A stretch of DNA of 64,000 bases, taken from Andalucia godoyi And28 (lineage: Eukaryota > Protista > Jakobida). The position numbers and the translations under genes are program-made. The DNA is taken from assembly GCA_009859145.1 (NCBI GenBank), contig VRVR01000031.1, positions 202,597 through 266,596 of the forward strand. Reading direction: 5' to 3'. The notes below the pieces were generated by a model, which saw only the letters and a list, made by a program, of their open reading frames with translations, had not been told where the DNA came from and searched no databases. This document shows positions 2,036 through 54,946 of this stretch, one piece after another (within the stretch, counting starts at the first letter, position 1; the number at the start of each line of letters is the position of its first letter).

Positions 2036-2457
2036 GTGCACAGCAAAGTGTTCATGTAAGTTATTGTTGAAAAAAATGTCTTCTTATAGACGTCTGTACG
2101 CCTACGCTGCACACTATTTTGCAGTTTGTGATGCAAGTCCGTCGTCCGATTGCGGATCTTCTGTTGCATTCGCAGTGGCGCTCGACGCATTGTGCACACC
2201 ATTGGCGAACCTTTTCTACCGTTGCAATCTTTGGATTCGAGTGTATCTGAAGCACCAACACAAACGATGTAAATTCGAAAAGTGTCTTTCGATCCTACAT
2301 GAGGCAGTTTTAAGAAAGGTATACGTTGGTGTTTTTTTAAAATTCCGAGTCGATGGAAGATAAAATGAGAACAGAGAAGATGACCCGTCGCACATAACGT
2401 TACCGCAGCGCTTGCAGCAGCTGTGGGCGCATCGGGCCTGCACACCTCTGTGTCGCG

Positions 2458-22184: not shown

Positions 22185-22882
22185 GAGCAATAAGATTTTA
22201 ATATAAAAAAACCAAAAAAGTACGCAGGACAGAAAGCAGAGACCAATATCAAAAACAAAAACAAAAACAAAAACAAAAATAACAATAACAATAACAATAA
22301 CAATAATGATCTCAAGATAGTAAAAGAAGAGAGACGCGCGATCTTGAATGGAGGAGGATAAGTGGAATACGGAAACAGAGGAGCCCCCATTAAAGACGTG
22401 TCCGCGAGTGTGTTTTTTCTTTTTCTTTTCTTGGATTTGAGAGTGATGAAGCATCAAGCCGCTCCCTCTCCCCCCCCCCCCAAGAGGTTTTACGACTGCG
22501 CAGGAGTTGAAGAACTTGCAGCTTCATGTGAGTTTGTGTGGCTGTTTGCGGGCATTTTTCATGGTCCGAATCCCTGTGATCTTTCATTAAAAGAAGGAAT
22601 CACTCCGATCGTTGCTTTCCTTCTTCTTCACGTTTGAATACATACATATATATGTAAATACCAAGATCAAGTCACTTCATCCGTTTCTTCTTTTATTTTA
22701 TATAATAGATTATATATTTTAAATCGACTTTTCCTTCCTTCAACCTTTTTCTTTTTTCATCCTTGATTTATTGGTGAATTTCACGTTTGCCTGCACTTTT
22801 TGTCTGCTGTTTTTATTTTTGAAAGACTGCTTTCTTCTTTTTCTCCTGTTTCCACCACCACTCCTCCTCTTTTTTTGTTGAA

Positions 22883-25411
22883 ATGACGTACAAGTTCAAG
22901 GTCCGCTTTCGTAACGAAGTCCGCCGATTTTCGCTGGAGCGTCCTGTGACACTGCATGCACTGTTTTCGCGTCTGGTGATGATGTTTTCGCCTTTTTATC
23001 CTCAGTTTCCATCGTCTGCTACTGCCGAAGAAGCAGGGGCGTTGCTTGTGACGTATTTTGATGGGAACGATCAAGTCACGATTCGGGATGACCAGGATCT
23101 CGAGGAAGCGCTCGTCATCGGGAAGCCGGTTCTGGAGCTCACCGTCCATCTTTCGCAAGATGCACGGACCCAAAAGGGAGAATCAAGCGGCGAGTCATCC
23201 GACAGTGAGGCCCATTGCCACGCAAAGTCCCGGCATACCCACGGCCATCACGGCCATCACCGTCAACACGGTCATCACGGACGCGGCCATGGACGTCACA
23301 ATCCCTTCATGAACCTGATTGACGGACTTCTCGGCGGAATCGGAGGAGCTTCAGGTAACGACGAAAAGAAAGAGGACCGTCCTAGACATGGATTTCGTCA
23401 CGGACACTGTTTTCGTAGTTTTTTCCACCCCGAGGTGAACAGGAATGCATCCGAAACACCGGCTCCCTCTGCACCCTCGTCTTCCTCGTCTTCTTCTGCT
23501 GGCTCGTCTTCTGCCGCCGCTTCTAGTTCTGGAGCTGGGGCGGCGTCCAATGCGAGTGGATCGACTGGACCGTCGCATCGCGAGGAAAAGAAGCCAAAAA
23601 ACACAAGCGAGTATCCTGAGTTTGCTCCGGATCTGATTTCTGATTTGGAAATTGTGCTGAATTCATTTGCAGCGAATCCAGAGCAGGTTGGTCATCTGCT
23701 TGACACGGGGCTTCCGCTGACTGTTCTGGCTCGACTCCAGTCCCTTGGAATGCCCGCACGTGTGCTTCGTCACCGTGTGAAACAGTTTGCGCATGAGTTC
23801 TTTTCCACGCGCGAAGGCTTGTTGATGAACATGAGGCAGACTGTGTTCTCGCCCGCGTTCTTTGGTGTCCTTTGCGGCTTGAATACCCCGGCAGGACAGG
23901 AGTTCATTCGCGGTGTTGTGTCGACATTTGGATTTGGAATTTCCATACCAGAAGAGTTTGATGTGATGACGCTCCTTCCTACCATCATGTCACAGTTCGG
24001 TCATCATGGACGGCGTGGTGCGTGTCCTTTTGATTTTTTTGACGCGATGCACGGCAGCACCCAGGATGGCAATGAAGGTCCGTCCACTTCCACCGCAGAA
24101 GCGCCTCTGCAGCCGGAGGTTGCCGTTCCTGTGAAGAAGGTCGATGCACCGGCTCAGCAGCAGCAGCAGCAGACGCCTCGGATGGAGGAGAAGAGCGCCG
24201 TTCCTGCTCCGAGTTTCCATGTGCCATTGTCAGCAACATCATCGACATCGTCCTTGTCATCTGCCTCCACTTCTCCTTTCCAGCCCCGTGCGTCGACGAG
24301 CGACGTAGATATGGTGCACTCGTGGGAAGTTGTATCCAATGACGATGACGATTCTGCAAAGTTTGAGAACTTGTCACGCAAGGTCGACTTGCTGTTGAAG
24401 GACGAAGATGATGTCTCGGAGAACGGGAACGTCACGTCTTCCGAGCTCGTCGGATCCTCCTACACTGCTGTGGGCGACTTTGAGTCGTCGGCTGTGAGCA
24501 CCGCATCCAGCGCTGTTCCCGTAGCGCCGGGCTTGTCCGCGTCCTCCGCCTCCGTGACTCCCACGACTGTCTCGTCCACATACTCCATGGCAGCCTCTCA
24601 GGACAATACTGCCGCAGTGCTTCTCCCCGTCTCTCCTGTCGCTGCTGCACCTGCACGTGTACCTGCGCCCACTCCTGTTCTTGTCCCAGCACCAGCACCA
24701 GCACCAGCACCAGCACCAGCACCAGCACCAGCACCAGCACCAGCACCAGCACCAGCACCAGCACCAGCACCAGCACCAGCACCAGCACCAGCACCAGCAC
24801 CAGCACCAGCACCAGCACCAGTACCAGTACCAGCACCAGCACCAGCAACAGTTTCGAGCAAGGTGACTGTCTCGAATGCAGCATCCAAGGCGACCGCGAG
24901 CTCAGCGTCTGTTGTGGATTCCGACCTTCCGCGCTGTGCCCTTCTGTCGTTCTCCATCTCTCCATCAAAGATTGTGCAGCCCGCATCTCCCGTGACGCTT
25001 GAATGGCGTTTCCGAAACACTGGAAGCGTTGCATGGTCGGAGGGCTGTAGGCTCATGCTCGAGTCCGGAGATGTAGTTCCAAAAGCACCGATGTTTGTGG
25101 AGCTTCCGTCTGTTGCACCTTCGCACATCTGCACCGTTTCCGTTCGTGGAAGCGCACCCGACGAGCAAAAGTCAGTCAACTCCGTGTGGAAACTGGTGTC
25201 GCCAGACGGCCAGTGTTTCTATGTGGCACGCTCGCTGTTCCGCGCAGAGTACAAGGAGGAAATGAAGCAGCTGATCCAAACCATCCGCGAAATGGGCTTC
25301 TTGGCAGTCCCGGAACGCCACATCTTTGAACTCCTGACTGCCAGTCACGGTGCTCTAACGTACGAAGTTGTCAACGAGCTTACTCGCCTGGAATCCATGT
25401 TTTCGAAATAG
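22883..25411 (+). CDS. NBR1/p62-like autophagy receptor (PB1, LIR, Pro-Ala repeat, NBR1-FW/Ig-like, UBA-like)
   Basis: PB1 FKVRFRNEVRRF...TYFDGNDQVTIRDDQDL; WRFRNTGSVAW...SVWKLVSPDG; C-terminal IREMGF. Confidence 0.75.
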   Translation: MTYKFKVRFRNEVRRFSLERPVTLHALFSRLVMMFSPFYPQFPSSATAEEAGALLVTYFDGNDQVTIRDDQDLEEALVIGKPVLELTVHLSQDARTQKGESSGESSDSEAHCHAKSRHTHGHHGHHRQHGHHGRGHGRHNPFMNLIDGLLGGIGGASGNDEKKEDRPRHGFRHGHCFRSFFHPEVNRNASETPAPSAPSSSSSSSAGSSSAAASSSGAGAASNASGSTGPSHREEKKPKNTSEYPEFAPDLISDLEIVLNSFAANPEQVGHLLDTGLPLTVLARLQSLGMPARVLRHRVKQFAHEFFSTREGLLMNMRQTVFSPAFFGVLCGLNTPAGQEFIRGVVSTFGFGISIPEEFDVMTLLPTIMSQFGHHGRRGACPFDFFDAMHGSTQDGNEGPSTSTAEAPLQPEVAVPVKKVDAPAQQQQQQTPRMEEKSAVPAPSFHVPLSATSSTSSLSSASTSPFQPRASTSDVDMVHSWEVVSNDDDDSAKFENLSRKVDLLLKDEDDVSENGNVTSSELVGSSYTAVGDFESSAVSTASSAVPVAPGLSASSASVTPTTVSSTYSMAASQDNTAAVLLPVSPVAAAPARVPAPTPVLVPAPAPAPAPAPAPAPAPAPAPAPAPAPAPAPAPAPAPAPAPAPAPVPVPAPAPATVSSKVTVSNAASKATASSASVVDSDLPRCALLSFSISPSKIVQPASPVTLEWRFRNTGSVAWSEGCRLMLESGDVVPKAPMFVELPSVAPSHICTVSVRGSAPDEQKSVNSVWKLVSPDGQCFYVARSLFRAEYKEEMKQLIQTIREMGFLAVPERHIFELLTASHGALTYEVVNELTRLESMFSK
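24686..24847 (+). repeat. Coding (CCAGCA)n hexamer, about 27 units, encoding (Pro-Ala)n
   Basis: Direct reading; two CCAGTA variants near the 3' end. Confidence 0.95.
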
Positions 25412-37929: not shown

Positions 37930-40380
37930 ATGTGCTCTGTTCAGCAGACGCAGTATGTCGGAGTGCACTGCTCCAAGAATATTGATCCCGATGCGTTCGA
38001 CACTCTTGAGAGTTCGTACATACGACTCTCGTATTATGCTCCGATATCGTTCTACTCCTCGAAACGAGTTCGACATCATCTGTCAGGACCCTATGCGGGA
38101 TACGAGCTTTCATCCTATGACCTGTCTTTGGAAAATCAGAGAATTCTGCTCGAGTACATGACTGCGTTTCTCAGAGAAGTCAAGCGGATGGAAGGCTTCT
38201 TTTATCCGCTCCTGGATTTTTCAAAGTTTGACCAGAATGGAGTGTATCCCCCGTCTCGAGGAACGACTCTGTACTATTTCGACAACATTCCTTCGTATCT
38301 CAAAGCGCCAGATGTGATTCATATTTCCTTTGTGACGAGCAAGATCCACATCTCCTTTGTTCCTTTGCATGGCTTCTCACTGGCGAAGTTCCAGACGATT
38401 CCGCTGAAAGTTTGGCTGAATCCATTCCCGCTGCCAAGCAGTTCCGACTGCCATTCCACTACCGATACGTTGCTTCCGTACCAGTCTGCGATCGTGAATC
38501 GCATTTTGAAACAGGAACGCGAAATGAAGCAGTACGAAGTGTGTATTTTGGACGGAGTCGCACGACTTCCGTTCACCCTGCACTCATTTTCCATTCATTC
38601 TACAGTCTTGTGTTGCCCGCCAGGGACTGGAAAGACCCGTATTGCATGCTCGATCATTGGTACAACCACCCAGCCATGCTTGATTGTGTGTCCGCCGCAG
38701 GTGATTTTGCAGTGGAAGAACGAGCTGAATCGTATGAACATCCAGCTCCTTGAGGACGGAGGATACGTCAAATTAGTGGACTTTGCGCATGCGGCGGACT
38801 CCGTGGATCTTCTCACGCTTCCCGACAAAGTCAAATTTGTTGTCATCGACGAGTTTCAAGAGTTGTTTCGCTCCTCGACATTGACAAAGTCGGTCGGGCT
38901 TGAGACGTTCCGAGAGGAGCACAAAGCTTTCTTGATTTTGATCAGCGCGACGCCACCTGCTCCCCAATCCCTTCCCGATTGTTGTCTCACCATTCCGGCG
39001 TTCCGCACCGATGTTTCCTCTTTTCGAGATGCGGTTCTGAAGCAGATTTCGTATGCAGTCTCTCCGGACGAAGTCAAGAAAGAAGCAGTCGCGGTGGGAT
39101 TGCAGTTTCCAGAAATTGTGTGCTGCACACATTTTGTAGAGCTGAACAAAATGCAGCGGCTTTCCTACGATCTTCTCAACATCATGTTTGAGGTTTTTGT
39201 GTACCGCGTGCGCCATACAACCCATCGCCTGCAGCAAGGGTACGGAAACCGTCGCTGGGTGAATGAATGCCTAGAGGCGCTGAAGAAGGGCTTCAAACGG
39301 ATCGATTTCGTGACCGTTCCGGACGCCATGCAGGGTTTCGATACTAGCATTCACAATGGCAAGCTGTGGAAATTTTTCAATTTTGATACGATTCGAACAG
39401 ATCAGCTGCTGTGGTCGTTTTCAGATCCGACCGCCTTTTTCCGATCCAAGTTGCGCATCTGCAATCTTGCCAACGAAACGGATTTCAAGCGGAATTATTC
39501 AATTCAGAGCATTGCAAAAAAATTGAATGTGCCGGTGGAAGATCTGCTGACCAGTTTGAATATCAAACCTTGTGAAATGATGGGCAAGTTCATGCAGCAG
39601 ACCATGCTGCGTTTCATGTCCATGTACTCGCAAAATTCAAGGGAGGAGAGCCAGAACCGCAGAAAATCCCAGCATTCAGGCGAAGCGGACGACGGAAGCT
39701 GCCCCATTTGCTTGGACGAGTTCGACCCCTCCAAGAGCTATATCATTCTCCATCCCTGCGGCCACTTCTTATGCCGCAGCTGTTCGATGTACTACACGTC
39801 CGAGGATTGCCCAATGTGTCGGACGTTTATCGAGGACCGGAAAATGATGACTAAGGACACGCGGCCGGTCGTTAGCGCACACATGAAGCCAGTTGCTGAC
39901 GCCCCCACTGTGGCAGATGCGGAAGGGTTTGGGAAAGTGCGTGCGCTCGTCGATTTATTGCAGACCTTCACGGAAGGGAAGAAGTCCTCTGTCGTCCATT
40001 GCGAGACGTGCCAGGCAGTGGATTTTGTGCGAGTTGTATGTGAGCAGAACCACATACCGCACATGATTTATCGTCCGGGGGACAATCCAGACGTTCTTGA
40101 ACGGTTCAAAACGGCAGTTGAGAAGTCGCCGCACCATCTTCTATGTACCAGTGTGTCTGGCATCGACTTTCCCACCGTGAAGGCTGCCGTAATGTTTGCG
40201 ACGCTTGAAAAATGGATCACAAAGCCGGTTGAGGCGATGGAAGATGAGATCCAGTTCATGTGTCGAGTTCGCCGGCTGGGAAGCCAAGAGAAGGTCGAAT
40301 TTCATCGGTTTGTGACACGAGGCACGGTGGAGGAAATTCTTTTCTGGCGTGTCTGGCATCGATACTCGGCCTTGATGTAG
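37930..40380 (+). CDS. Compact SNF2-family helicase-like protein with inserted RING finger (Rad5/Rad16/SHPRH-type layout)
   Basis: PPGTGKT, LIVCPPQVILQW, DEFQ, SAT, RING CPIC...CGHFLCRSC...CPMC, RVRRLG, FVTRGTVEE. Confidence 0.8.
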   Translation: MCSVQQTQYVGVHCSKNIDPDAFDTLESSYIRLSYYAPISFYSSKRVRHHLSGPYAGYELSSYDLSLENQRILLEYMTAFLREVKRMEGFFYPLLDFSKFDQNGVYPPSRGTTLYYFDNIPSYLKAPDVIHISFVTSKIHISFVPLHGFSLAKFQTIPLKVWLNPFPLPSSSDCHSTTDTLLPYQSAIVNRILKQEREMKQYEVCILDGVARLPFTLHSFSIHSTVLCCPPGTGKTRIACSIIGTTTQPCLIVCPPQVILQWKNELNRMNIQLLEDGGYVKLVDFAHAADSVDLLTLPDKVKFVVIDEFQELFRSSTLTKSVGLETFREEHKAFLILISATPPAPQSLPDCCLTIPAFRTDVSSFRDAVLKQISYAVSPDEVKKEAVAVGLQFPEIVCCTHFVELNKMQRLSYDLLNIMFEVFVYRVRHTTHRLQQGYGNRRWVNECLEALKKGFKRIDFVTVPDAMQGFDTSIHNGKLWKFFNFDTIRTDQLLWSFSDPTAFFRSKLRICNLANETDFKRNYSIQSIAKKLNVPVEDLLTSLNIKPCEMMGKFMQQTMLRFMSMYSQNSREESQNRRKSQHSGEADDGSCPICLDEFDPSKSYIILHPCGHFLCRSCSMYYTSEDCPMCRTFIEDRKMMTKDTRPVVSAHMKPVADAPTVADAEGFGKVRALVDLLQTFTEGKKSSVVHCETCQAVDFVRVVCEQNHIPHMIYRPGDNPDVLERFKTAVEKSPHHLLCTSVSGIDFPTVKAAVMFATLEKWITKPVEAMEDEIQFMCRVRRLGSQEKVEFHRFVTRGTVEEILFWRVWHRYSALM

Positions 40381-44642: not shown

Positions 44643-46250
44643 TCAATCAACATCTTCGCCGTCTTCTTCAGAAACCGATGCATCGTTCTCGTTCTCGTTC
44701 TCGTTCTCGTCATATCCTTCCCAACGTCCAGCTCGAACGGCAGCAATGATCTGCTGAACCTCGAGTGTTTCTTGCTCATTGAGCTCCGCAGCATCAGCAT
44801 ACGGGGACTCGTGGACAAACAAAGAGCGCCCAAAGGGCAGAGCGGGATCCTTTCGCTCTGGCGGTTCAACATAGTCCCACGCAACGATGTTGCCGTCCCA
44901 TCCCGAAGTGACAAGAAGTGGCAAAAAAGGATGCCAGGAAACATCCCGAACGATGTAAGAATGGAATGTCTTGGAAGACACCGTTCTTCCGGAGAGAATG
45001 TCGTACACCACGACAGATCCATCGGCAGAGCCAGTATAAATGTACTGCTGCCCGGTTGTTTCTCGAGGAGAAAAACGCGCACGAATAAGAGTACCAGTCA
45101 GCGTGTGCGAGCCGCAATACGTCATTACGGACGTGTCGCTTGGGTGGACCGGTGCATCTTCAATGTTAAAGCCCACATTGCCATAGCGATAGTCATGATG
45201 GAGCAGACCTGCTGCCTGAACATCATCCTGCGAAATGGTCGAAGACGCACGACGAAGATCCCACAGTTTAATCGTTTGATCTTTGCTCGACGACAGGAAG
45301 TACCGTCCGTCTCCTCGAGAATCCAAGTACGCAACACCCGCCAAATGGCCCATGAACATCCCGGAAGGAACATGAAATTCCGGAGATCTCCTATCCCACA
45401 GACAGATGAGTCCGTCGTCGCCGCCGGAAACAAAGACATTTCCCGTCTCGTCTGCAACCGCCAGAGCATTTGCGTCGTCCGTGTGCCCCCGTCGCACCCG
45501 GATTCGCTCTCCATTCACGACATCCACCTCGAACAAAAATCCACCCGAAGTCCCACACACCACAGTTCCTGTCCGGGCCGCAAACCGGACGGAAAACACG
45601 CACATTGCTTCGTCGGCACCGAACTCGTCATCACTCACTCCGAGGTCAATCGACTTGCCCCGCAGTTGCTGCGGGCTCCCAAGCCCGGACCGCTTGGACA
45701 GAGATACGCTGTTCTCTACCGAACCATCGCTTGTCGCAGGCTCCTCTGCTGGTGGAGCATCTGACTTTGCCATGGAGAAGCAGTACAAAGAAGACCCCCA
45801 ATGGGCAGAAACACCGACGGAGTCGTCGGGGCTGAACGCAACATCCGCAATTGCCCATCCACTAAAAGGAACCGACAGGCTTAGAAACGGACTGGCTTTC
45901 CGCTTCTCGGACATGGCCTGCTCGATCTCTGCCGTCTCAAACAACTTCACCTGGTTCGTCTGCTGAGCAGCCATGAACACGTCTCCCGAATGCGAAAACG
46001 CGCCGCAAAAGACCCGCGAAGATGCATGATGTACACACTGCGCTGGATGGTTTGGGATGAGGTTCGACAGCACTGCCCGGTACGGCGCAGGCGAGCGCGA
46101 GGACGATCTCAGCGCAGACAGAACATCCGAGCCGCCTCCACCGCCCCCACTACTACGATCGCCGCGGCCCTGTGCCGAGCACAAAGAGGAGTGTTCCTGT
46201 CGAAGAAGCGTCTGCTGTCCAGCTGCATGCCGCGACACTGTAACTGGCAT
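44643..46250 (-). CDS. DCAF11: WD40 protein DCAF11/WDR23/LEC14B
   Basis: SGGDDGLICLWDRR, GHLAGVAYLDSRGDGRYFLSSSKDQTIKLWDLR, TGQQYIYTGS, VRDVSWHP. Confidence 0.9.
   Translation of the reverse strand: MPVTVSRHAAGQQTLLRQEHSSLCSAQGRGDRSSGGGGGGSDVLSALRSSSRSPAPYRAVLSNLIPNHPAQCVHHASSRVFCGAFSHSGDVFMAAQQTNQVKLFETAEIEQAMSEKRKASPFLSLSVPFSGWAIADVAFSPDDSVGVSAHWGSSLYCFSMAKSDAPPAEEPATSDGSVENSVSLSKRSGLGSPQQLRGKSIDLGVSDDEFGADEAMCVFSVRFAARTGTVVCGTSGGFLFEVDVVNGERIRVRRGHTDDANALAVADETGNVFVSGGDDGLICLWDRRSPEFHVPSGMFMGHLAGVAYLDSRGDGRYFLSSSKDQTIKLWDLRRASSTISQDDVQAAGLLHHDYRYGNVGFNIEDAPVHPSDTSVMTYCGSHTLTGTLIRARFSPRETTGQQYIYTGSADGSVVVYDILSGRTVSSKTFHSYIVRDVSWHPFLPLLVTSGWDGNIVAWDYVEPPERKDPALPFGRSLFVHESPYADAAELNEQETLEVQQIIAAVRAGRWEGYDENENENENDASVSEEDGEDVD

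Positions 46251-47518: not shown

Positions 47519-47520
<2 letters not shown>

Positions 47521-47558
<38 letters not shown>
47521..47558. repeat. (CAA)n microsatellite
   Basis: Direct reading. Confidence 0.9.
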
Positions 47559-47559
<1 letters not shown>

Positions 47560-47815
47560 AAACAAAAAAAAATAAGAAAAAAGAAGATAAGAAAGACAAT
47601 TTTGAAAAACGCAAATAACAAGTTTTATTTTTTTATTTACGGGTTTCGATTTACTGACTGTGACTTCCTTGTATTTTCCTCCTCCTTCTTCTTTTGCGTC
47701 TTCTTTTGGTTCTCCAGCTGTGGATCATTGCTATCGTTTGTGCTCCCCCCGTAGATTACTCAGGTCTCGTCAACAGAAGCAAAGAGGAAGGGAGGAAAAA
47801 AAAAAGAAAGAAAAA

Positions 47816-50800
47816 ATGTCAATCGAGGATTCTGTGGGTATGCCGTTGCGGTTTCCCGTGCCCTTGTTCGATGTTGGTGACGAAGCGACATATGAAGTAT
47901 CTTCGGGAAAGTTTGATCCAGGGCAGTTTCGGAGGCTAGACCGCTTGTCCAGCTCGTATTGGCAATCGGATTCGAGCGTGCGACCACACTGGATCGATAT
48001 CACATTGACGAAGCCTCGCGTTCTCTGGGGTGTCCAGCTGTGCTCCAGACTCGAGTATGACAACTCGTTTGTGCCCTTGAACGTCAGCGTCGTTATCAGC
48101 GATCGAGTGGAGGCTGCATCCCCCGGGTCCACCTTGATCCAAGATTTGGACGTCAGGTATGAAAAGATTACACATCATTCGTTGCCCAATGACGTTGCCT
48201 TTGGGACTGTTTGGTTCACAAAGGGTCCACAGCCAAGTTTTAGCGGCGTGTCTCCCTCGGCAGCGTCGCAAAAGTCCGTGTTGAACAATCTGGGGGCAAA
48301 ATGTGCTCGAATCCGGCTGCTTCTTACGCCTTCCGGCATAAACTGCAGGCTTCGCTTTGTTCGCCTGCTTACCGTGCGCGAATTGGACTTGACCGCGGAT
48401 CAGCTGCTGCAGCCAGCGGTGTTTCGTGTTTCATCGAAACGATTGCAGTTTCACGAGGAGTCCTTGGGAAAACCAGGGACACTTGTCCGCGTGTCTCTGG
48501 CAAGGAGTCACGGGACCGATGTTTGGGTTCCAAAGAGTTTAGTGCAGGAGCTGTGGGGAAAACACCCCGGCGAGGTGTCAGCAGACAGCGACTGTGGCAT
48601 AGTCATGCAAGACGCTGACAAAATTCGTGGTCTTACTGCTGGCATTATTGGAATGATCAAGGAGTTCTCTTCAAATTCTGCCGCTAAGTTTGCAGAATGT
48701 TTCGACACACTTCTGCCCGTTCTTGAAACGCTCAAGACTTTGTCGCAGCTCCGTCCGTCGGGCGTGCTGCACGAATCTGGGCTTCTGTCCCTTATTGTGA
48801 GCGCGTTGATCTCTTCTCCATCGAATTCACTGCTGCTCTCGCTACTGTCATCCATTCCCGTGGATCACCATCCTTCGATACTGTATGTGCTGTCTCGATT
48901 CCGGCAGTGCCCTCCTAGTGATGCCGTGCTTTCGCTCGTTGCGAAGTGGCTGAGTGCATTGCTGGTGAATTCGGACCGAATGCGAGCTGGCTGGTCGATG
49001 TACTTTGGAAACACGGAAGTTGAAAAACTGACAGGTGTCTTGTTCGGCTGCCATGAGGTTTCAAAGAGTCCGTCTGCGTTGATTGCTTTCATCACTCACT
49101 TCTTTCAAATATCCTCTGGTTCAGGAAGCCGTCTTTCTGAAGAATTCCTCAGCGATTTAGTCCGCCAGTTGGACGACTCCATTGGCTTGATGTCCTTCTC
49201 CCCTGGCGAGCTTTCCTTCTTGTTCTCCTCGGAAACGGAGGAGCCGCGCGATGTCGATTCTCATGCTGTGGCATCCCAAAGTACCCTTTTTCCGAGAGAA
49301 AAATCGGCCGTTATTCGAGAAATGGAAATGCTTATCGAGGCACAGCAGATGGATCGACAGCAGGGAAATCAGCGAGAACGCAGCGCTCTAACCGCGTTGC
49401 ATGTTGCGCTTTCTGCAGATTCCCCGCCCAAGTTGCGGATGCATCCGATGGACGTTGGTGACGATGCCGAATCGGCTCATGAAGAAGAAGATAGCGAAGA
49501 GCTTTCTGACGACGGCTCGCCAGACTTCTGTGAATCCCCGTCGTCACTGATGGCACCTGGGGAGCAACGTGAGAATCTTGGAACTCGGGAGCGCATTGCA
49601 CTTGCTCTTTTTACGCGGGTATCCGATGACATTTTGTGTCTCCTCGATCAATCCAGGCTTCTAAAGAAAGTCAATCCAATTGTCGTGAGATTCATCACGA
49701 TGTTGAGCAAGACTACGCTGCCGCTCTTTGCACACTTCTTCTTCATCCCATTTCTCAAACGGACGCGGCTGTTTTACGGCATCCTGTTTGCAACCCATTT
49801 GAAAACCCTTCCGTGGATGCAGTTTGTAGAAGAGGCTACGTCTTTCATGGATTTTGAGAAAGCGCTATTTTCGGAAGTGCATTTCAATGAAAAAACGTGG
49901 AATGTGCTCAGACACACAGTCATGTTTTCGCTGTTCGACGGTGGACGATTGCGAAGTTTGCTGCGAGACACAACGTTAGCAGGACCGCTGAAAGATCTCA
50001 TCTGCGTTGATCCTTTTCGACCTTCTGCGGACTTGCGTCACACGCGCCTTCTCCTGCGAATTTGCATTAGCAGTCCTATCTCATCGCACGTCGAAATGTT
50101 GCTGTCCGTGATCGAGTCACTGGTTACTGTTGGATTTGGAGACCTTTTTCAAAAGCCAACGACAGTTTCCACCGACTGTTCAGATGTCGTTTCTTGGGTC
50201 AACCTGCATCAGACGTGTGTTTCCAACCTCGGAATCCTGATCGGGTCATTTTCTATTGCCAGGAGAGTATGTGGTCAAGCGTTGCAGCATTCGCTGAGAA
50301 CTCTGAATGAGGCATCTTGCATTCTTGTGTTTGGACGATTGGCACTGTGCTTACATTTGCTCCTGGATTCCACTGATGGACACGTGTTCAAGAATTCTCA
50401 GCCTTGGTGGCTGTCGTCTCAGGATGCACTTCTAGATCCTTTGCTGCAGTTTTTGAATTTTGTCCCCTTGGACAGGGAATTTGCCCACTTCTACGAAAAA
50501 TACCTCTCACGACGTCTTCTCCGGTCATCAGCGAGGTCGATCGAATTAGAACTGCACGTCATTCACGAGCTGTCGTGTGTGGATCTTGGAAAATGCAGGA
50601 GAATGTTGTCGGATGTCATGTCGTCCATTTCTCTGACGTCTCAGTTTGATTCCTATGCCCTTTCTGCGTTTGATCTGAAACACCTATCTGAAGCGTCGAA
50701 GCCGACGTTTGATGCCAGGGTATTGTCTGTCCGACTGCTGACCAGCTCCATCTGGCATCCGTTTATTCGGTCTTTGCTGGATGCAAAGTACAATGTCCCC

Positions 50801-53800
50801 GAGGCAATTTCCAAGAGTCTAGCCCAGTTTGAGCAGTTTTATGCTACGATTCATCCGGACCGCAAGGTGAAATTCTTGCTGGCCGTTGGCTCTGTGACAC
50901 TGGCATACGGGAAAGCCGTATTGCATCTCTGCCCTCTTCAGGCGTCCATTCTACTGTCGTTCAACGACAGACCGCGTTGGAACATCGATGATTTGCGAGC
51001 GAGTTTGGGATTCACGAAGGGCAACTTGCTCTCGGACGCTTTACAGATCCTGACATCGTTTGGTGTCCTGGAAGTATCTGGCCGTGTTGTGCAGCTGAAG
51101 TTCTCATTCAAATCCGATTCGGCTGCCGTGACTGATCTTCCGCACGTTCTATCTCTCGTCGATGAAGAAAATGTTGGCAGCCTTCCTTCAACGGATGTTC
51201 CAGTTTTGATTAGTTGGAGGCGCCAGGTCCTGGACTCCTTCTTGGTGCGCATTGTGAAGAGCAATTCGTCGCGGCAGCCGAAGCCTGGCATGCCATATGA
51301 CGAGCTTGTGAAAGAGGCCGTCTCCCGCGTTTCGTTCTCTGTTCCACTGCAGCAGATACACTCAAGAATTTCACGCCTCGTAGATGCCGGGTTTCTCGCT
51401 GTCAAGGACCACGGTCAGTGGGTGCGTTACGTGAATGAAAAGCAAGACCAGAATGTGGCGCATGCCTCCCAGGACAGTTCTATTGTCAAGGAAGGCAGGT
51501 CTTCCTGGGAAATCGTTCTGGAGTGCTCCTGTTCATCAACGGATACGCTTCGAATTTCGGAAGAGGCCTTCTTTCAAGGGTTTTGGAAGAAGATCTTGCG
51601 CACAAGAGTCACTGTGGACACGGATCTTGTCTCGGCTGCGGTGCTGTCCACGAATCTCTGCGCTTCCATAGTGTCGATTTTGCAAAATCGTGTGACTCGG
51701 CTGCATGACAGTTTGGTCAATTGCCGTGACAGAGATGCTTCTGTTTCCTTGAAAAAAATGGAAATCATGAGTGGCATCAGGTTTGAGTTTCCTTCGTTGT
51801 CTGATTTTTTGATTGCTTCCTTGCCGGACACTGCGATGCAAACGCTCAAGGATCTTTATCATAGGCTGTCTGCTAGGTTTCCGTCGTCGTCGTCCAATTC
51901 AGCAACGCTGCGGTCCTGGTTGGCAGGCTGCGTTGTGCATGCGGACTTGCCTTTCCACGACTTTTTAGAGTCGATTCCTCGTTCATGCGACTCCGTATCC
52001 ATGGAAGCATTTATTGAAAGTATCCTGCATGCATCCCTTCTTTGCGAATGCCAGTTGTCTTCGCTGGCAATGCCGTTGTCGGCTCTGCTGACAGAGTTTG
52101 CTGCCTCTTGGCTCAACTGCGTGCTGTCTGTGGCCGATATTGTTGCGAGAGCTTGGGATCTTTTCCAAGAGGGCGACGTTGTCCGAGTTCGTATTTATAC
52201 GGGAACGATCGTTTCCATGTCGAACCGTGAAACGATTGTTGTCCGCCTGGGAGACGAGGGCGGAAAGGAAGAATGTGCCATCCAGCAGTTGCATGTTGCA
52301 ATTCCTCTCTCTGCACAGTCTCGTTCACCTCCGCTGTTTTTCAAGAAGCAATTGGGAGATGTCTTCCGTTGCATCGAATGTGTCAATCCGATTTTGAAGA
52401 TGCGAGAAAATAGAAAGAGCTCCGTGTCGGTGATGGCTGGTTCTATGGTGGAGCAAGTTTGGTCTGTCTATCGAAAGACGTCGTATGACATGTCTCTGGG
52501 AGTTGCAAAGCAGCGTGCAATAACGCAACTGCAGTTGAACGCAGGTCTACACGAAGAACCAATCAATCGCATACCAGAGTCTGCGCTGTTTGAATCGGTC
52601 TCGGAAGGCCAGATTTTAAAGACAATTCAGGAAGCGATCAATCAAGTGTGCGAATGCTTCTCCATCGATTATGACACGAGCCTTGCGTTACTCACCCTGT
52701 ATGGATGGTCCATTCCGCTCTTGGTAGAAGCCCTCGGCAGCCAATCTTTCAAGATTCCGATTATCTGCGATTACCAAGAGATCGTGGAGCCCTTTTTGTG
52801 TGCCATCTGCTATACGGAGTCGCAAAAGGGCTGTCACCTTGGATGTGGCCACGTGTTTTGCGACCACTGCTGGCGAAGCTACCTTGATTCCAAGCTTGAT
52901 AATCGGGACATTTTGATCGTTCACTGCATGGAACCGTCGTGCACAGACCATGTCCTGCCGTATTCCAAAGTGCAGCATCTCAACCAGAGTGTATCGCAGC
53001 ATCTGCAGAAGAGCTTGTTAGAGAGTTATTCGCTCCAAAAGCGCATCCAACCATGCCAAAATCACCGCGGATGCACATCATTCATCAGCACGGTTCCTGG
53101 TTTCTATTCTTACAGGCTTCACTCGGATCCTTCGTGGGCGAAGTCCTCTGCGACGGGGGCTTCTGGAACCACCGTCGTATGCTCGGATTGTTCAACTGCA
53201 TTTTGTGCGTCCTGCCGTGCACCGGATCATTTCCCAGCGACGTGCGACTGGATTAAGGATTGGATTTCGAAAGGTGGATATGCGGAGACGGACAGTGATG
53301 AGGACACAGCTTCACTTCGTTTGAAGGCGCTGACAACGCGGCCGTGTCCGGTTTGCAACACGCTGATTGAAAAGCAAGGTGGCTGTCCGCATATGCAGTG
53401 CTCGTCCTGCAAGACGGACTTTTGTTTCCACTGTCTTGGATCGTATCCAAACTGCTTTTGCCAGTCCGGAGTTCGAGGGGCGGTGGGGGGCTCTGCCGTG
53501 GGCACATCGGTTCACGAGCGTGCACACCTTTTCCGGCAGTTTAATGAACAGTGTGCGTCGTACGCGCTTGCAAAAGAAGTCTCCTTGCAGTTGGCGGCGA
53601 AGTTTTCGTCCATTTCGTCGTCTGAGACGTTTGATGATCGATCCGGCTCGCATCGTTTAGAAGAACTGTGTCGTTTGCTTGCGCGCTCCAACTCGCTTCT
53701 TGCGCATGCCTGCATTTCGTTGTATTTCCTCCCGGATTCTTCCCTCCGATCTCTTTTCGAGTTCAATTTTGAGGAGTTGAAAGTAGTAGTCAACAGAGTG

Positions 53801-54376
53801 CAGACCGAACTAGAGCGCAATATCCGTGGTGTTCTGGAATGGAAACGAGACGATGCACAAACCGTCATTCAGGAACTGCAGAGAATGATTCGAGTGTTTT
53901 GCAGCGTTGCGGAAGAAGTATCATTCTTCAAAGTCCCTGGCCATGGACTGTTAGTCTGTGATGTTTGTGGAGAAGGAGTCGAGCGAGAAGAATGGAAAGA
54001 GCATGCAGATGGCCATGTTGCGGAGCCATCCCCTTCGCCAATGGTCGGCACGTCCAACATGTTTTTTTCCTCTACGCAGGGAGCAACATCCAAGTCACGC
54101 GGCAGTCTGCATTTCTCGTTTCGCAGCTCCCAGATCCTTCCCGTTTGGCGCTGCATGGTGGATGTGGGTGTCGTGCAGAGTCTTTTGTCGATTGCCGTTG
54201 ATGTTGGCCTTCATCGCATTCGTAAGGCGGACCTTGGTGTCTTTGCACATCTCTCGGCCGACAAGCGAATGCACAAAGTCTTTGACATCTCTGATGAAGC
54301 TGGTGATAACGGCCAGTCGCTGTTGAACACATTCATTCAAGCACAAGGAAGAGTGCCGGTTGGCTTCAAGCAGTAG
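47816..54376 (+). CDS. CUL9/PARC-like E3 ligase: DOC/APC10 + cullin + Ariadne-type RBR (2186 aa)
   Basis: First ATG 47816. DOC YWQSD...PHWIDI; cullin FYEKYLSRRLL, RLLTSSIWHP, RIVK; RING1, IBR, RING2 GGCPHMQC; Ariadne domain. Confidence 0.88.
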   Translation: MSIEDSVGMPLRFPVPLFDVGDEATYEVSSGKFDPGQFRRLDRLSSSYWQSDSSVRPHWIDITLTKPRVLWGVQLCSRLEYDNSFVPLNVSVVISDRVEAASPGSTLIQDLDVRYEKITHHSLPNDVAFGTVWFTKGPQPSFSGVSPSAASQKSVLNNLGAKCARIRLLLTPSGINCRLRFVRLLTVRELDLTADQLLQPAVFRVSSKRLQFHEESLGKPGTLVRVSLARSHGTDVWVPKSLVQELWGKHPGEVSADSDCGIVMQDADKIRGLTAGIIGMIKEFSSNSAAKFAECFDTLLPVLETLKTLSQLRPSGVLHESGLLSLIVSALISSPSNSLLLSLLSSIPVDHHPSILYVLSRFRQCPPSDAVLSLVAKWLSALLVNSDRMRAGWSMYFGNTEVEKLTGVLFGCHEVSKSPSALIAFITHFFQISSGSGSRLSEEFLSDLVRQLDDSIGLMSFSPGELSFLFSSETEEPRDVDSHAVASQSTLFPREKSAVIREMEMLIEAQQMDRQQGNQRERSALTALHVALSADSPPKLRMHPMDVGDDAESAHEEEDSEELSDDGSPDFCESPSSLMAPGEQRENLGTRERIALALFTRVSDDILCLLDQSRLLKKVNPIVVRFITMLSKTTLPLFAHFFFIPFLKRTRLFYGILFATHLKTLPWMQFVEEATSFMDFEKALFSEVHFNEKTWNVLRHTVMFSLFDGGRLRSLLRDTTLAGPLKDLICVDPFRPSADLRHTRLLLRICISSPISSHVEMLLSVIESLVTVGFGDLFQKPTTVSTDCSDVVSWVNLHQTCVSNLGILIGSFSIARRVCGQALQHSLRTLNEASCILVFGRLALCLHLLLDSTDGHVFKNSQPWWLSSQDALLDPLLQFLNFVPLDREFAHFYEKYLSRRLLRSSARSIELELHVIHELSCVDLGKCRRMLSDVMSSISLTSQFDSYALSAFDLKHLSEASKPTFDARVLSVRLLTSSIWHPFIRSLLDAKYNVPEAISKSLAQFEQFYATIHPDRKVKFLLAVGSVTLAYGKAVLHLCPLQASILLSFNDRPRWNIDDLRASLGFTKGNLLSDALQILTSFGVLEVSGRVVQLKFSFKSDSAAVTDLPHVLSLVDEENVGSLPSTDVPVLISWRRQVLDSFLVRIVKSNSSRQPKPGMPYDELVKEAVSRVSFSVPLQQIHSRISRLVDAGFLAVKDHGQWVRYVNEKQDQNVAHASQDSSIVKEGRSSWEIVLECSCSSTDTLRISEEAFFQGFWKKILRTRVTVDTDLVSAAVLSTNLCASIVSILQNRVTRLHDSLVNCRDRDASVSLKKMEIMSGIRFEFPSLSDFLIASLPDTAMQTLKDLYHRLSARFPSSSSNSATLRSWLAGCVVHADLPFHDFLESIPRSCDSVSMEAFIESILHASLLCECQLSSLAMPLSALLTEFAASWLNCVLSVADIVARAWDLFQEGDVVRVRIYTGTIVSMSNRETIVVRLGDEGGKEECAIQQLHVAIPLSAQSRSPPLFFKKQLGDVFRCIECVNPILKMRENRKSSVSVMAGSMVEQVWSVYRKTSYDMSLGVAKQRAITQLQLNAGLHEEPINRIPESALFESVSEGQILKTIQEAINQVCECFSIDYDTSLALLTLYGWSIPLLVEALGSQSFKIPIICDYQEIVEPFLCAICYTESQKGCHLGCGHVFCDHCWRSYLDSKLDNRDILIVHCMEPSCTDHVLPYSKVQHLNQSVSQHLQKSLLESYSLQKRIQPCQNHRGCTSFISTVPGFYSYRLHSDPSWAKSSATGASGTTVVCSDCSTAFCASCRAPDHFPATCDWIKDWISKGGYAETDSDEDTASLRLKALTTRPCPVCNTLIEKQGGCPHMQCSSCKTDFCFHCLGSYPNCFCQSGVRGAVGGSAVGTSVHERAHLFRQFNEQCASYALAKEVSLQLAAKFSSISSSETFDDRSGSHRLEELCRLLARSNSLLAHACISLYFLPDSSLRSLFEFNFEELKVVVNRVQTELERNIRGVLEWKRDDAQTVIQELQRMIRVFCSVAEEVSFFKVPGHGLLVCDVCGEGVEREEWKEHADGHVAEPSPSPMVGTSNMFFSSTQGATSKSRGSLHFSFRSSQILPVWRCMVDVGVVQSLLSIAVDVGLHRIRKADLGVFAHLSADKRMHKVFDISDEAGDNGQSLLNTFIQAQGRVPVGFKQ

Positions 54377-54906: not shown

Positions 54907-54946
<40 letters not shown>
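54907..54946. repeat. (AC)20 microsatellite
   Basis: Direct reading. Confidence 0.95.

What the first reader, a model, noticed from the sequence alone, without database searches (positions are those of the whole stretch)
47816..54376. Complete CUL9/PARC-type cullin-RBR fusion in a unicellular flagellate
Seen: DOC/APC10 (~47870-48380), cullin with neddylation-type Lys (RIVK, 51257-51259), UBA-like segment, RING1, IBR, RING2 with catalytic Cys (GGCPH, 53384-53386), Ariadne domain and a C2H2-like tail. To my knowledge this order is described for chordate CUL9 and is regarded as a late fusion. So this is either convergent fusion or a much older origin. It hard-wires the known neddylated-cullin/ARIH1 partnership into one chain.
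Basis: partly seen in the sequence, partly recalled or inferred. Interest (0 to 1): 0.75.

Follow-up and report, generated by a model that had tools for sequence, protein, structure and literature searches.

The report
Protist DOC–cullin–Ariadne RBR ubiquitin ligase
One intact 2,186-codon gene joins a DOC domain, a cullin and an Ariadne-type RBR ubiquitin ligase in a single protein, an arrangement the literature treats as unique to vertebrate CUL9, and relatives with the same layout turn up in several unrelated non-chordate sequences.

Summary
Window 47816-54376 (+) is one uninterrupted ORF of 2,186 aa. Its order is DOC/APC10, helical repeats, cullin homology domain with the neddylation-type Lys (K1148), a 400-aa linker, UBA-like, RING1, IBR, Rcat with catalytic C1857/H1859, Ariadne domain and a C-terminal UBZ-like zinc finger.

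It is not a misassembly. Cullin lies upstream of the RBR on the same strand in 9 other independent contigs. Two of them (L001, L003) also start with a DOC domain, and L003 keeps the zinc finger.

It is CUL9-like in logic but is not a demonstrated CUL9 orthologue:
- The CUL7/9-specific N-terminal barrel, ARM and CPH modules are absent.
- DOC is N-terminal, not inserted in cullin repeat 2.
- The cullin resembles CUL2/3/4/1 more than CUL7/9, and the DOC resembles APC10 more than CUL7/9.

The RBR does point to CUL9. It shares with CUL9, and with every cullin-linked protist RBR, a 6-7-residue "GGY" insertion between IBR and Rcat that ARIH1/2 lack. Neighbour-joining trees group all cullin-linked RBRs (bootstrap 34-91%, depending on alignment and masking).

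The most likely function is a neddylation-activated E3-E3 ligase working in cis. No paper found describes this family. The organism was not identified.

The parts
47816..54376 (+). Complete CDS, 2,186 aa plus TAG stop, with no intron
   Evidence: It is a single ORF starting at the first in-frame ATG, and codon usage is homogeneous along its length.
47867..48385 (+). DOC/APC10 domain (aa 18-190) at the extreme N-terminus
   Evidence: Pfam ANAPC10 scores 33.2 bits against a cut-off of 21. A local DOC HMM aligns aa 27-188. The profile of the three protist DOCs hits human APC10 at E 3e-13, and CUL9 and CUL7 at E 2-3e-8.
48386..50122 (+). Short beta segment, then helical repeats (aa 191-769), probably cullin repeats. 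No family assignment.
   Evidence: A weak Pfam Cullin hit covers aa 598-702 at profile positions 125-234 (E 0.05). The AlphaFold model is all-helical from aa 267 but of low confidence (pLDDT below 50).
50123..51415 (+). Cullin homology region (4-helix bundle, alpha/beta, WHB; aa 770-1200)
   Evidence: Pfam Cullin 90.6 bits. The profile with four protist relatives hits CUL2 at 144 bits, CUL3 at 139, CUL4B at 133, CUL1 at 120, CUL7 at 89 and CUL9 at 83.
51257..51259 (+). K1148, neddylation-type lysine in 'LVRIVK' of the WHB
   Evidence: Invariant column in alignments A2, A3 and A7 with protist relatives and CUL9. It matches the cullin 'VRIMK' motif (established knowledge).
51416..52600 (+). Linker of about 400 aa (aa 1201-1595), mostly helical, with no detectable family
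   Evidence: No Pfam hit. Low-confidence model. No significant similarity to the relatives' linkers. Coding-type codon usage.
52601..52750 (+). UBA-like domain (aa 1596-1645)
   Evidence: Aligned to the CUL9 and ARIH2 UBA-like region. Lies within the high-confidence model that matches ARIH1/2.
52793..52951 (+). RING1 (aa 1660-1712; C1662, C1665, C1677, H1679, C1682, C1685, C1704, C1709)
   Evidence: Pfam zf-C3HC4 scores 23.2 bits against 21. The ligands are nearly invariant in alignment A4.
53003..53251 (+). IBR (aa 1730-1812) with a lineage-specific insertion of about 30 aa
   Evidence: Pfam IBR 32.6 bits against 24.3. The Cys/His ligands are invariant in A1 and A4.
53252..53344 (+). IBR-Rcat linker (aa 1813-1843) carrying the 'GGY' insertion (WISKGGYAETDSDEDTASLRLKALTTRP)
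   Evidence: Shared by all cullin-linked RBRs, including vertebrate CUL9, and absent from ARIH1/2.
53345..53470 (+). Rcat/RING2 (aa 1844-1885). Catalytic C1857 is nt 53384-53386; H1859 lies two residues on.
   Evidence: Pfam IBR_1 31.9 bits against 27. C1857 is an invariant column. The motif is 'IEKQGGCPHMQC'.
53501..53935 (+). Ariadne domain (aa 1896-2040), a four-helix region
   Evidence: Aligned to the CUL9 and ARIH2 Ariadne region. Model pLDDT is about 90 with long helices. Foldseek matches to ARIH1/2 span it.
53945..54025 (+). UBZ-like zinc finger (aa 2044-2070; C2048, C2051, H2063, H2067)
   Evidence: zf_UBZ is the top Pfam hit at E 0.012, below cut-off. The same finger follows the Ariadne domain in L003: 'CKTCNVSVVEDKYAEHVERAH'.
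54026..54373 (+). C-terminal tail (aa 2071-2186), unassigned
   Evidence: No Pfam hit. Low-confidence model.

Best explanation
The gene encodes a real single-chain ubiquitin ligase that joins a cullin-RING scaffold to an Ariadne-family RBR catalytic module. It belongs to an undescribed protist family whose layout is N-terminal DOC, helical repeats, cullin/WHB, linker, UBA-like, RING1, IBR, Rcat, Ariadne, with or without a UBZ finger.

Proposed mechanism, inferred by analogy with neddylated CRL-ARIH1/2 and with CUL9-RBX1:
1. The cullin C-terminal region binds an RBX1-type RING protein.
2. NEDD8 is attached to K1148 of the WHB.
3. The NEDD8-WHB unit engages the UBA-like domain, and the RBX1 RING engages the Ariadne domain. 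This releases Ariadne-Rcat autoinhibition within the same polypeptide.
4. A UBE2L3-type E2~Ub docks on RING1 and passes ubiquitin to C1857.
5. Ubiquitin goes from C1857 to substrates. These are recruited not by a classical adaptor but probably by the N-terminal DOC domain, as for the DOC-dependent CUL9 substrate APEX2.
6. The C-terminal UBZ-like finger may bind ubiquitin on substrates or products.

Shown here: the ORF, the domains, the catalytic and zinc-binding residues, the neddylation-type Lys, and conservation of the architecture in other organisms. Inferred: RBX1 binding, neddylation, cis activation and the substrate-receptor role of DOC.
For: - Intact ORF with uniform codon usage.
- Domain calls by Pfam, PDB sequence search and structure comparison.
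- All RING1, IBR and Rcat zinc ligands, catalytic C1857 and H1859 are conserved.
- K1148 is invariant against protist relatives and CUL9.
- Cullin lies upstream of the RBR on the same strand in L001-L004 and L008-L013.
- P0155/L003 has ANAPC10 at E 5.6e-14, Cullin at 2e-26, Cullin_Nedd8, RING1 and IBR. Its Rcat, Ariadne and UBZ-like finger follow a 114-nt intron.
- L001 has a DOC exon, a GC-AG intron, then cullin and RBR.
- The CUL9 mechanism, including K1881R, the catalytic Cys mutant and DOC-dependent APEX2, comes from PMC11257990.
Against: - No biochemical or transcript data exist for this gene.
- Cullin_Nedd8 scores below Pfam's cut-off.
- CUL7, a close paralogue of CUL9, has not been found neddylated (PMC11257990). 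A cullin-like WHB therefore does not guarantee neddylation.
- The 400-aa WHB-RBR linker is far longer than in CUL9, so cis versus trans (between protomers) activation is open.
- The N-terminal 770 aa were modelled only at low confidence. Whether an adaptor-binding repeat exists is unknown.
- RBX1, NEDD8 and E2 genes of this organism are not in the window.
Confidence: 0.7

Rival explanations
1. Ancient common origin. The cullin-RBR junction arose once, early in eukaryote evolution. This protein and vertebrate CUL9 are divergent descendants, and CUL7 lost its RBR secondarily. This is a claim about evolution and is compatible with the mechanism above.
For: - The 6-7-residue 'GGY/F' insertion and the following 'K.L..L(T/I)(T/S)K' segment between IBR and Rcat are shared by the window, all protist cullin-linked RBRs and CUL9. 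They are absent from human ARIH1/2 and about 80 ARIH-like proteins.
- The long linker co-occurs with a cullin upstream in cis in 9 of 9 testable loci. It does so in none of the 8 loci examined that have another linker and at least 8 kb of upstream sequence.
- Neighbour-joining trees that include human ARIH1 and ARIH2 place all cullin-linked RBRs in one clade. Bootstrap is 91% with all columns and 72% with the linker masked.
- An HMM built from the protist RBRs ranks CUL9 above every ARIH-like protein.
Against: - An earlier alignment gave only 54% and 34% bootstrap. Neighbour joining on long branches is prone to long-branch attraction.
- The CUL9 HMM ranks several ARIH-like proteins above the protist fusions.
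- The cullin profile scores higher against CUL2/3/4/1 than against CUL7/9. The DOC profile scores higher against APC10.
- The DOC position differs from CUL9, and there are no ARM or CPH modules.
- The taxa of most relatives are unknown.
Confidence: 0.4
2. Convergent fusion. An Ariadne RBR was joined to a DOC-bearing cullin in protists independently of the chordate CUL7-ARIH fusion. The shared IBR-Rcat insertion is either a functional adaptation to cis tethering or was inherited from a free 'GGY-type' Ariadne paralogue.
For: - The literature model is a chordate or vertebrate fusion (PMC2785787; PMC11257990).
- The cullin and DOC parts show no special similarity to CUL7/9.
- N-terminal architectures differ. 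Protist subgroups themselves carry different accessory parts: EF-hand, FG repeats, GLEBS-like motif, presence or absence of DOC.
Against: - It requires the same insertion at the same site, with a similar sequence, to arise twice.
- No free GGY-type RBR with enough flanking sequence was found.
- The tree groups the cullin-linked RBRs.
Confidence: 0.45
3. Artefact. A misassembly or read-through joins two separate genes (a cullin and an ARIH homologue), or the locus is transcribed as two mRNAs.
For: No transcript evidence is available for the window. The long unassigned 400-aa linker could in principle hide a gene boundary.
Against: - There is no stop codon in 6.5 kb, and the linker has in-frame codon usage like its neighbours.
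- The same order on one strand is seen in 9 other contigs from different assemblies.
- The Mallomonas annulata protein of 3,073 aa holds both parts.
Confidence: 0.03
4. The RBR module is active but not controlled by neddylation. The cullin part serves only as a scaffold or dimerisation element, as proposed for unneddylated CUL7.
For: The Cullin_Nedd8 match is sub-threshold. CUL7 has not been found neddylated. The linker is long.
Against: The 'VRI.K' lysine is invariant across relatives that are only 22-25% identical. The UBA-like and Ariadne domains that read out NEDD8-cullin-RBX1 are retained.
Confidence: 0.15

Closest known systems
Vertebrate CUL9 (PARC)-RBX1, the chimeric cullin-RING/RBR E3 (PDB 8Q7E/8Q7H; PMC11257990)
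   Same: One chain holds a DOC domain, a cullin homology region with a WHB lysine, then UBA-like, RING1, IBR, Rcat and Ariadne. CUL9 is the best PDB sequence match (E 3e-25). The 'GGY' insertion between IBR and Rcat is shared. The presumed logic is the same: E3-E3 activation by NEDD8 inside one protein.
   Different: - There is no CUL7_CUL9_N barrel, ARM1-3/ARM9 or CPH (TP53-binding) domain.
- DOC is at the N-terminus rather than inserted in CR2.
- About 650 aa of other helical repeats lie between DOC and the cullin core.
- The WHB-RBR linker is 400 aa.
- There is an extra C-terminal UBZ-like finger.
- The cullin part is closer to canonical cullins than to CUL7/9.
- Hexamer formation is unknown.
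ARIH1 / ARIH2 working with neddylated CUL1-4 / CUL5 (E3-E3 super-assembly; PDB 7B5L, 7ONI)
   Same: The RBR module is Ariadne-type throughout (UBA-like to Ariadne). Foldseek E is 4e-18 over about 460 columns. Catalytic Cys and His are conserved.
   Different: Here the partner cullin is covalently attached. The IBR-Rcat linker is 6-7 residues longer, and the conserved 'DDSET.NW' segment of ARIH1/2 is replaced.
CUL7
   Same: A DOC-containing atypical cullin.
   Different: CUL7 has no RBR and has the ARM and CPH modules. Its DOC is internal. The profile score of the protist cullin region to CUL7 (89 bits) is lower than to CUL2/3/4/1.
APC2-APC10 (APC/C) and other DOC-bearing E3s (HECTD3, HERC2)
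   Same: A DOC domain combined with a ubiquitin-ligase catalytic core. The protist DOC profile matches APC10 best (53 bits) and HECTD3 next (38 bits).
   Different: In the APC/C the DOC and the cullin are separate subunits and there is no RBR. APC2 is the weakest cullin match (43 bits).
Uncharacterised protist cullin-RBR proteins found here (P0155/L003, P0005/L001, L004; P0010/12/13/22/30/34 and L008-L013)
   Same: The cullin > RBR > Ariadne order and the GGY linker. L001 and L003 also share the N-terminal DOC, and L003 the UBZ-like finger. The window groups with L003, L001 and Clastostelium P0007 (bootstrap 57-58%).
   Different: They are only 22-35% identical to the window protein. Relatives carry FG repeats (L003), a GLEBS-like motif (L001, L004) or an EF-hand (P0013, P0016, P0030). 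A second subgroup has no detectable DOC.

Membership tests
CUL9/CUL7 (atypical DOC-cullins) | Cullin homology region with a WHB lysine at the neddylation position | tested here: met
   Pfam Cullin 90.6 bits. K1148 is invariant against CUL9 rows in A2 and A3.
CUL9/CUL7 (atypical DOC-cullins) | Ariadne-type RBR element fused C-terminal to the cullin (CUL9 only) | tested here: met
CUL9/CUL7 (atypical DOC-cullins) | DOC domain inserted within cullin repeat 2, after a long N-terminal region | tested here: not met
   DOC is present but occupies aa 18-190, the extreme N-terminus. The CUL9 arrangement is taken from PMC11257990.
CUL9/CUL7 (atypical DOC-cullins) | CUL7_CUL9_N beta-barrel, ARM_CUL7_CUL9 repeats and CPH (Pfam Cul7) domain | tested here: not met
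   No hit at E up to 1 in the full-length scan or at E up to 10 in the segment scans. The same library finds them in the CUL9 fragments P0020 and P0093.
CUL9/CUL7 (atypical DOC-cullins) | Cullin and DOC domains closer to CUL7/9 than to other cullins or DOC proteins | tested here: not met
   Cullin profile: CUL2 144 bits, CUL3 139, CUL4B 133 and CUL1 120, against CUL7 89 and CUL9 83. DOC profile: APC10 53 bits against CUL9 and CUL7 at 37. These are similarity ranks, not a phylogeny.
CUL9/CUL7 (atypical DOC-cullins) | RBR groups with the CUL9 RBR to the exclusion of ARIH1/ARIH2 | tested here: inconclusive
   The insertion is shared. NJ bootstrap is 91% and 72% but 54% and 34% in an earlier alignment. 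HMM cross-scores are mixed.
CUL9/CUL7 (atypical DOC-cullins) | Binds RBX1; forms a hexamer; neddylated by a NEDD8 E2 | not testable with these tools
   Needs biochemistry or complex modelling with this organism's RBX1 and NEDD8, which are not in the window.
Ariadne subfamily of RBR E3s | UBA-like, RING1, IBR, Rcat with catalytic Cys (and His at +2), and a C-terminal Ariadne helical domain | tested here: met
   Model pLDDT is about 90. Foldseek to ARIH2 and ARIH1 gives E 4e-18 over about 460 columns.
Cullin family | Pfam Cullin above the gathering score; Cullin_Nedd8 (WHB) domain | tested here: met
   Cullin scores 90.6 against 33.2. Cullin_Nedd8 scores only 21.6 against 36.9, but the profile aligns through the WHB of CUL2, CUL4B and CUL1 to the C-terminus.
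DOC/APC10 domain | Pfam ANAPC10 above the gathering score | tested here: met
   28.6 and 33.2 bits against 21. Profile hit to human APC10 at E 3e-13.
UBZ ubiquitin-binding zinc finger | CCHH/CCHC finger matching Pfam zf_UBZ | tested here: inconclusive
   15.7 bits against 25.6, E 0.012, though it is the top hit. The finger and its position are conserved in L003. The AlphaFold model of it has low confidence.

The most novel reading that the evidence does not exclude
The covalent cullin-RBR ligase is not a vertebrate invention. It is an old eukaryotic enzyme class, found in stramenopiles (predicted proteins on record for Mallomonas annulata), probably in Amoebozoa (Clastostelium), in this flagellate-type genome and in several uncultured protists. 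It is marked by a diagnostic GGY insertion between IBR and Rcat. Vertebrate CUL9 would be its animal descendant and CUL7 a derivative that lost the RBR. Cis-wired E3-E3 catalysis would then be about as old as, or older than, the trans partnership of ARIH1/2 with canonical cullins.
Probability: 0.4. Interest if true: 0.8.

Novelty: new variant of a known kind. Interest (0 to 1): 0.62.

Why it matters
CUL9 is presented in current structural work as vertebrate-specific and as the only enzyme that unites cullin-RING and RBR catalysis in one chain. Its supposedly late origin is used to explain its odd neddylation pathway (PMC11257990).

This work finds a conserved protist family with the same wiring. 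It has a simpler N-terminus (DOC only, no TP53-binding CPH) and an added ubiquitin-binding-type finger. Three things follow:

- **Origin.** The claim of a late origin becomes testable, with a concrete sequence marker: the GGY insertion.
- **Experimental system.** The proteins are smaller and occur in intron-poor genomes. They could be used to study cis E3-E3 activation and DOC-mediated substrate choice.
- **Annotation.** Cullin and RBR surveys that rely on animal, fungal and plant models miss a recurrent architecture.

Tried and rejected
1. **The search for homologous proteins.** The full-length query returned only itself and two bird CUL9s. The profile of 8 RBR regions, with my over-strict E cut-off of 1e-20, returned two fragments and not even the alignment's own members. 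I did not use the third search. The exhaustive representative search, cluster look-ups, contig look-ups and a metagenome scan replaced it.

2. **AlphaFold of aa 1-1200** with a 6-row alignment gave mean pLDDT 45. That is too poor for fold search, so the DOC fold and the number of cullin repeats rest on sequence only.

3. **A suspected Tudor/SH3-like barrel** at aa 1440-1500 resembles segments in P0010 and P0012 by eye. It has no statistical support and was modelled as low-confidence coil. I dropped it.

4. **Linker and middle regions.** No significant similarity of the 400-aa linker or of aa 190-845 to any relative.

5. **UBZ-like finger in L001.** Sought downstream of the L001 gene and not found.

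6. **DOC in the second protist subgroup.** Sought upstream of the cullin in L008-L013 and not found, although L008-L010 and L012 offer 4-5 kb of upstream sequence.

7. **Organism identity.** No tRNA and no Rfam family in the window, and the window protein is not on record. The compact genome, with no intron evident in the ORFs examined and neighbours on opposite strands, resembles the description of the jakobid Andalucia godoyi (PMC7050145). This is untested. Strictly polycistronic kinetoplastid organisation is not seen.

8. **HMM cross-scoring** of CUL9, protist and ARIH-like RBRs gave mixed ranks.

9. **Literature.** Four searches found no description of protist cullin-RBR proteins. The trypanosome cullin paper does not mention CUL7, CUL9 or APC10.

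Full report
**1.

The ORF listing shows one ORF, 47660..54376 on the + strand. The first in-frame ATG is at 47816, which gives 2,186 aa ending in TAG. The window contains no N. GC by codon position and codon usage are uniform along the ORF and match 15 neighbouring genes, including in the unassigned 400-aa linker (cosine 0.87-0.96 in frame, 0.76-0.82 out of frame).

Pfam results:
- ANAPC10, aa 18-96, above cut-off.
- Cullin, aa 869-1087, 90.6 bits.
- Cullin_Nedd8, aa 1135-1195, 21.6 bits, below cut-off.
- A C3HC4 RING at aa 1661-1693.
- IBR, aa 1730-1810.
- IBR_1 (Rcat), aa 1842-1877.

The best solved-structure match is human CUL9: aa 1600-2003 against CUL9 2002-2387, E 3e-25. ARIH2 and ARIH1 come next, and the cullin part matches CUL1, CUL4 and CUL2.

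K1148 in LVRIVK is nt 51257-51259. C1857 in EKQGGCPHMQC is nt 53384-53386, with His at +2.

An AlphaFold model built with a 38-row alignment is confident (pLDDT about 90) for aa ~1590-2040. It matches ARIH2 and ARIH1 over about 460 columns (E 4e-18), so it covers UBA-like through Ariadne. CUL9 is rank 13.

The "C2H2-like tail" is CxxC-x11-H-x3-H at aa 2048-2067. Its best Pfam match is the ubiquitin-binding zinc finger zf_UBZ (E 0.012, sub-threshold).

**2. The surroundings**

The window is a compact eukaryotic region of about 50% GC. Genes lie on both strands and no intron is evident in the ORFs examined. No tRNA or Rfam family is present.

The divergently oriented upstream neighbour (44643-46250, - strand) is a clear DCAF11 homologue (E 2e-69). 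I could not identify the organism. The window protein is not on record. "Unicellular flagellate" is therefore unverified.

**3. It is not alone and not an artefact**

An exhaustive HMMER search of 1.84 billion cluster representatives with aa 845-2039 found no close orthologue; the best non-self hit scored 164 bits. It did find many long proteins that match in both the cullin and the RBR parts.

Pfam confirms Cullin, with or without Cullin_Nedd8, plus UBA_ARI1, IBR and Rcat in P0005, P0012, P0017, P0016, P0030, P0034, P0190 and P0154. P0022 has Cullin_Nedd8 only, and P0010's cullin match rests on phmmer alone (Pfam).

Named sources are few:
- P0030 is from Mallomonas annulata (stramenopile, EukProt).
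- P0007 is from Clastostelium recurvatum (Amoebozoa). Only the RBR part is seen in that 953-aa predicted protein.
- P0016 is labelled as an "archaeon" MAG.
- The rest are metagenome or Logan contigs.

A metagenome scan added 80 loci. Every locus with the long IBR-Rcat linker and enough upstream sequence has a cullin region upstream on the same strand: L004 and L008-L012. L013 also has an upstream cullin, but introns split its linker and Rcat region, so its linker type could not be read.

Two loci repeat the window's full layout.

- **L003** (ENA ERZ27263109, GC 61%). P0155 has ANAPC10 at aa 16-90 (E 5.6e-14), Cullin (2e-26), Cullin_Nedd8, RING1 and IBR. The catalytic Cys codon is split by a 114-nt GT-AG intron. 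The joined 2,786-aa model continues with Rcat (GGCNHMTC), Ariadne and the finger CKTCNVSVVEDKYAEHVERAH, at the same place as the window's finger. phmmer aligns window 1662-2091 to it at 154 bits.
- **L001** (Logan ERR14822400, GC 50%). It has a DOC exon, an inferred GC-AG intron, then DOC, cullin and RBR. The joined N-terminus scores ANAPC10 at E 3.8e-4, just under cut-off, and 47 and 105 bits (the two exons) with my DOC HMM, whose training rows included this same L001 N-terminus.

Misassembly of the window is therefore very unlikely.

**4. How it probably works**

By homology with neddylated CRL-ARIH1/2 and CUL9-RBX1 (PMC11257990), the likely sequence is:
1. The cullin C-terminus binds an RBX1-type RING.
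2. NEDD8 on K1148 repositions the WHB and binds the UBA-like domain.
3. The RBX1 RING engages the Ariadne domain, freeing Rcat.
4. A UBE2L3-type E2~Ub on RING1 charges C1857.
5. C1857 modifies substrates.

The N-terminal DOC domain is the obvious candidate substrate receptor, as CUL9 has a DOC-dependent substrate. The UBZ-like finger may add ubiquitin binding.

All zinc ligands, the catalytic Cys and His, and the neddylation-type Lys are conserved among relatives only 22-35% identical. That argues for retained activity and NEDD8 control. RBX1 binding, neddylation and cis versus inter-protomer activation are inferred, not shown.

**5. Relation to CUL9**

Against orthology:
- No CUL7_CUL9_N, ARM_CUL7_CUL9 or CPH domain is found, although the library detects them in CUL9 fragments.
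- DOC is N-terminal, whereas in CUL9 it is inserted in CR2 after about 1,100 aa.
- The profile of five protist cullin regions scores CUL2 144, CUL3 139, CUL4B 133 and CUL1 120 bits, against CUL7 89 and CUL9 83.
- The DOC profile scores APC10 53 bits, against CUL9 and CUL7 at 37.

For a shared origin of the RBR, and perhaps of the junction:
- Between IBR and Rcat, the window, all protist cullin-linked RBRs and CUL9 carry W..(G)G(Y/F).E...K.L..L(T/I)(T/S)K.CP.C. This is 6-7 residues longer than the W.KKC.DDSET.NW..ANTK.CPKC of ARIH1, ARIH2 and about 80 ARIH-like proteins.
- The long form goes with a cis cullin in 9 of 9 testable loci. None of the 8 loci examined that have another linker and at least 8 kb of upstream sequence has a cullin.
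- NJ trees of 103 RBR-Ariadne regions, including human ARIH1 and ARIH2 transcribed from the PDB alignments, recover one clade of all cullin-linked RBRs. Bootstrap is 91%, or 72% with the linker masked.

Reasons for caution:
- An earlier alignment gave 54% and 34% bootstrap.
- HMM cross-scores are mixed.
- All these branches are long.

I rate common origin and independent fusion as about equally likely.

**6. Novelty**

The papers found state that CUL7/PARC are chordate-restricted (PMC2785787). They describe CUL9 as vertebrate-specific, late-evolving and unique in combining both E3 types (PMC11257990). Four literature searches found no description of protist cullin-RBR proteins. Domain-architecture databases may list such proteins, but I could not check them.

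I classify this as a new variant of a known kind: a protist DOC-cullin-Ariadne RBR family with an N-terminal DOC, no ARM or CPH modules, and a UBZ-like tail.

**7. Limits**

- There are no transcript or protein data.
- The taxa of the window and of most relatives are unknown.
- The N-terminal 770 aa and the linker are structurally unresolved.
- The trees are distance-based.
- The intron models for L001 and L003 are my own inferences from splice-site consensus and reading frame.

Noticed in passing
window 44643-46250 (-): A DCAF11 (WDR23) homologue, that is a CUL4-DDB1 substrate receptor (PDB 9ptu_A, E 2e-69). It is divergently adjacent to the cullin-RBR gene across a 1.5-kb intergenic region that holds an (AAC)16 run at 47519-47565 and A-rich tracts.
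   Followed up: partly
L003 5721-14195 (model aa ~590-950); L001 (P0005 aa 1319-1340); L004 ~700-760; P0007 N-terminus: Relatives of the window protein carry nucleoporin-like pieces: FG repeats ('GTGFSFGS') in L003 and FG-like repeats in Clastostelium P0007. A Nup98 GLEBS-like motif ('DELRLQDY' in P0005, 'DEIRLEDY' in L004) sits in the WHB-RBR linker, with a weak Pfam Nup98_GLEBS hit for P0005. The window protein has none of these.
   Followed up: partly
P0013/P0190, P0016, P0030 (Mallomonas annulata): A second protist cullin-RBR subgroup has an EF-hand between the cullin and the RBR, an Rcat ending in 'YHT..C', and no detectable DOC within 4-5 kb upstream (L008-L010, L012).
   Followed up: partly
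L002 5552-11792 (contig of P0070): A CUL9-like gene sits on a metagenome contig. It has three DOC exons and a single 1,263-aa terminal exon holding cullin C-terminus, RBR and Ariadne. It is very close to vertebrate CUL9 in the RBR, but its taxon is unknown. It may show how far CUL9 proper extends beyond vertebrates.
   Followed up: no
window 22883-25411 (+): An NBR1-like protein (PB1 plus N_BRCA1_IG/FW domain) with a long (Pro-Ala)n run and His-rich and Ser-rich low-complexity stretches.
   Followed up: no
window 19581-22457 (-): A 957-aa protein with a GTP cyclohydrolase II domain (aa 140-310) followed by a long C-terminal region with a weak SIS match. This is an unusual architecture for RibA.
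   Followed up: no
window 37930-40380 (+): A protein with weak SNF2/ResIII helicase matches and a clear C3HC4 RING (aa 588-636). It is a third ubiquitin-system gene within 17 kb.
   Followed up: no
window 54907-54946: A perfect (AC)20 microsatellite lies in the intergenic region just downstream of the gene.
   Followed up: no
tool behaviour: the search for homologous proteins failed to return proteins that are representatives in the same collection (for example P0005, P0007, P0012), even when they were rows of the query alignment. Absence of hits from that tool should not be read as absence of relatives.
   Followed up: partly
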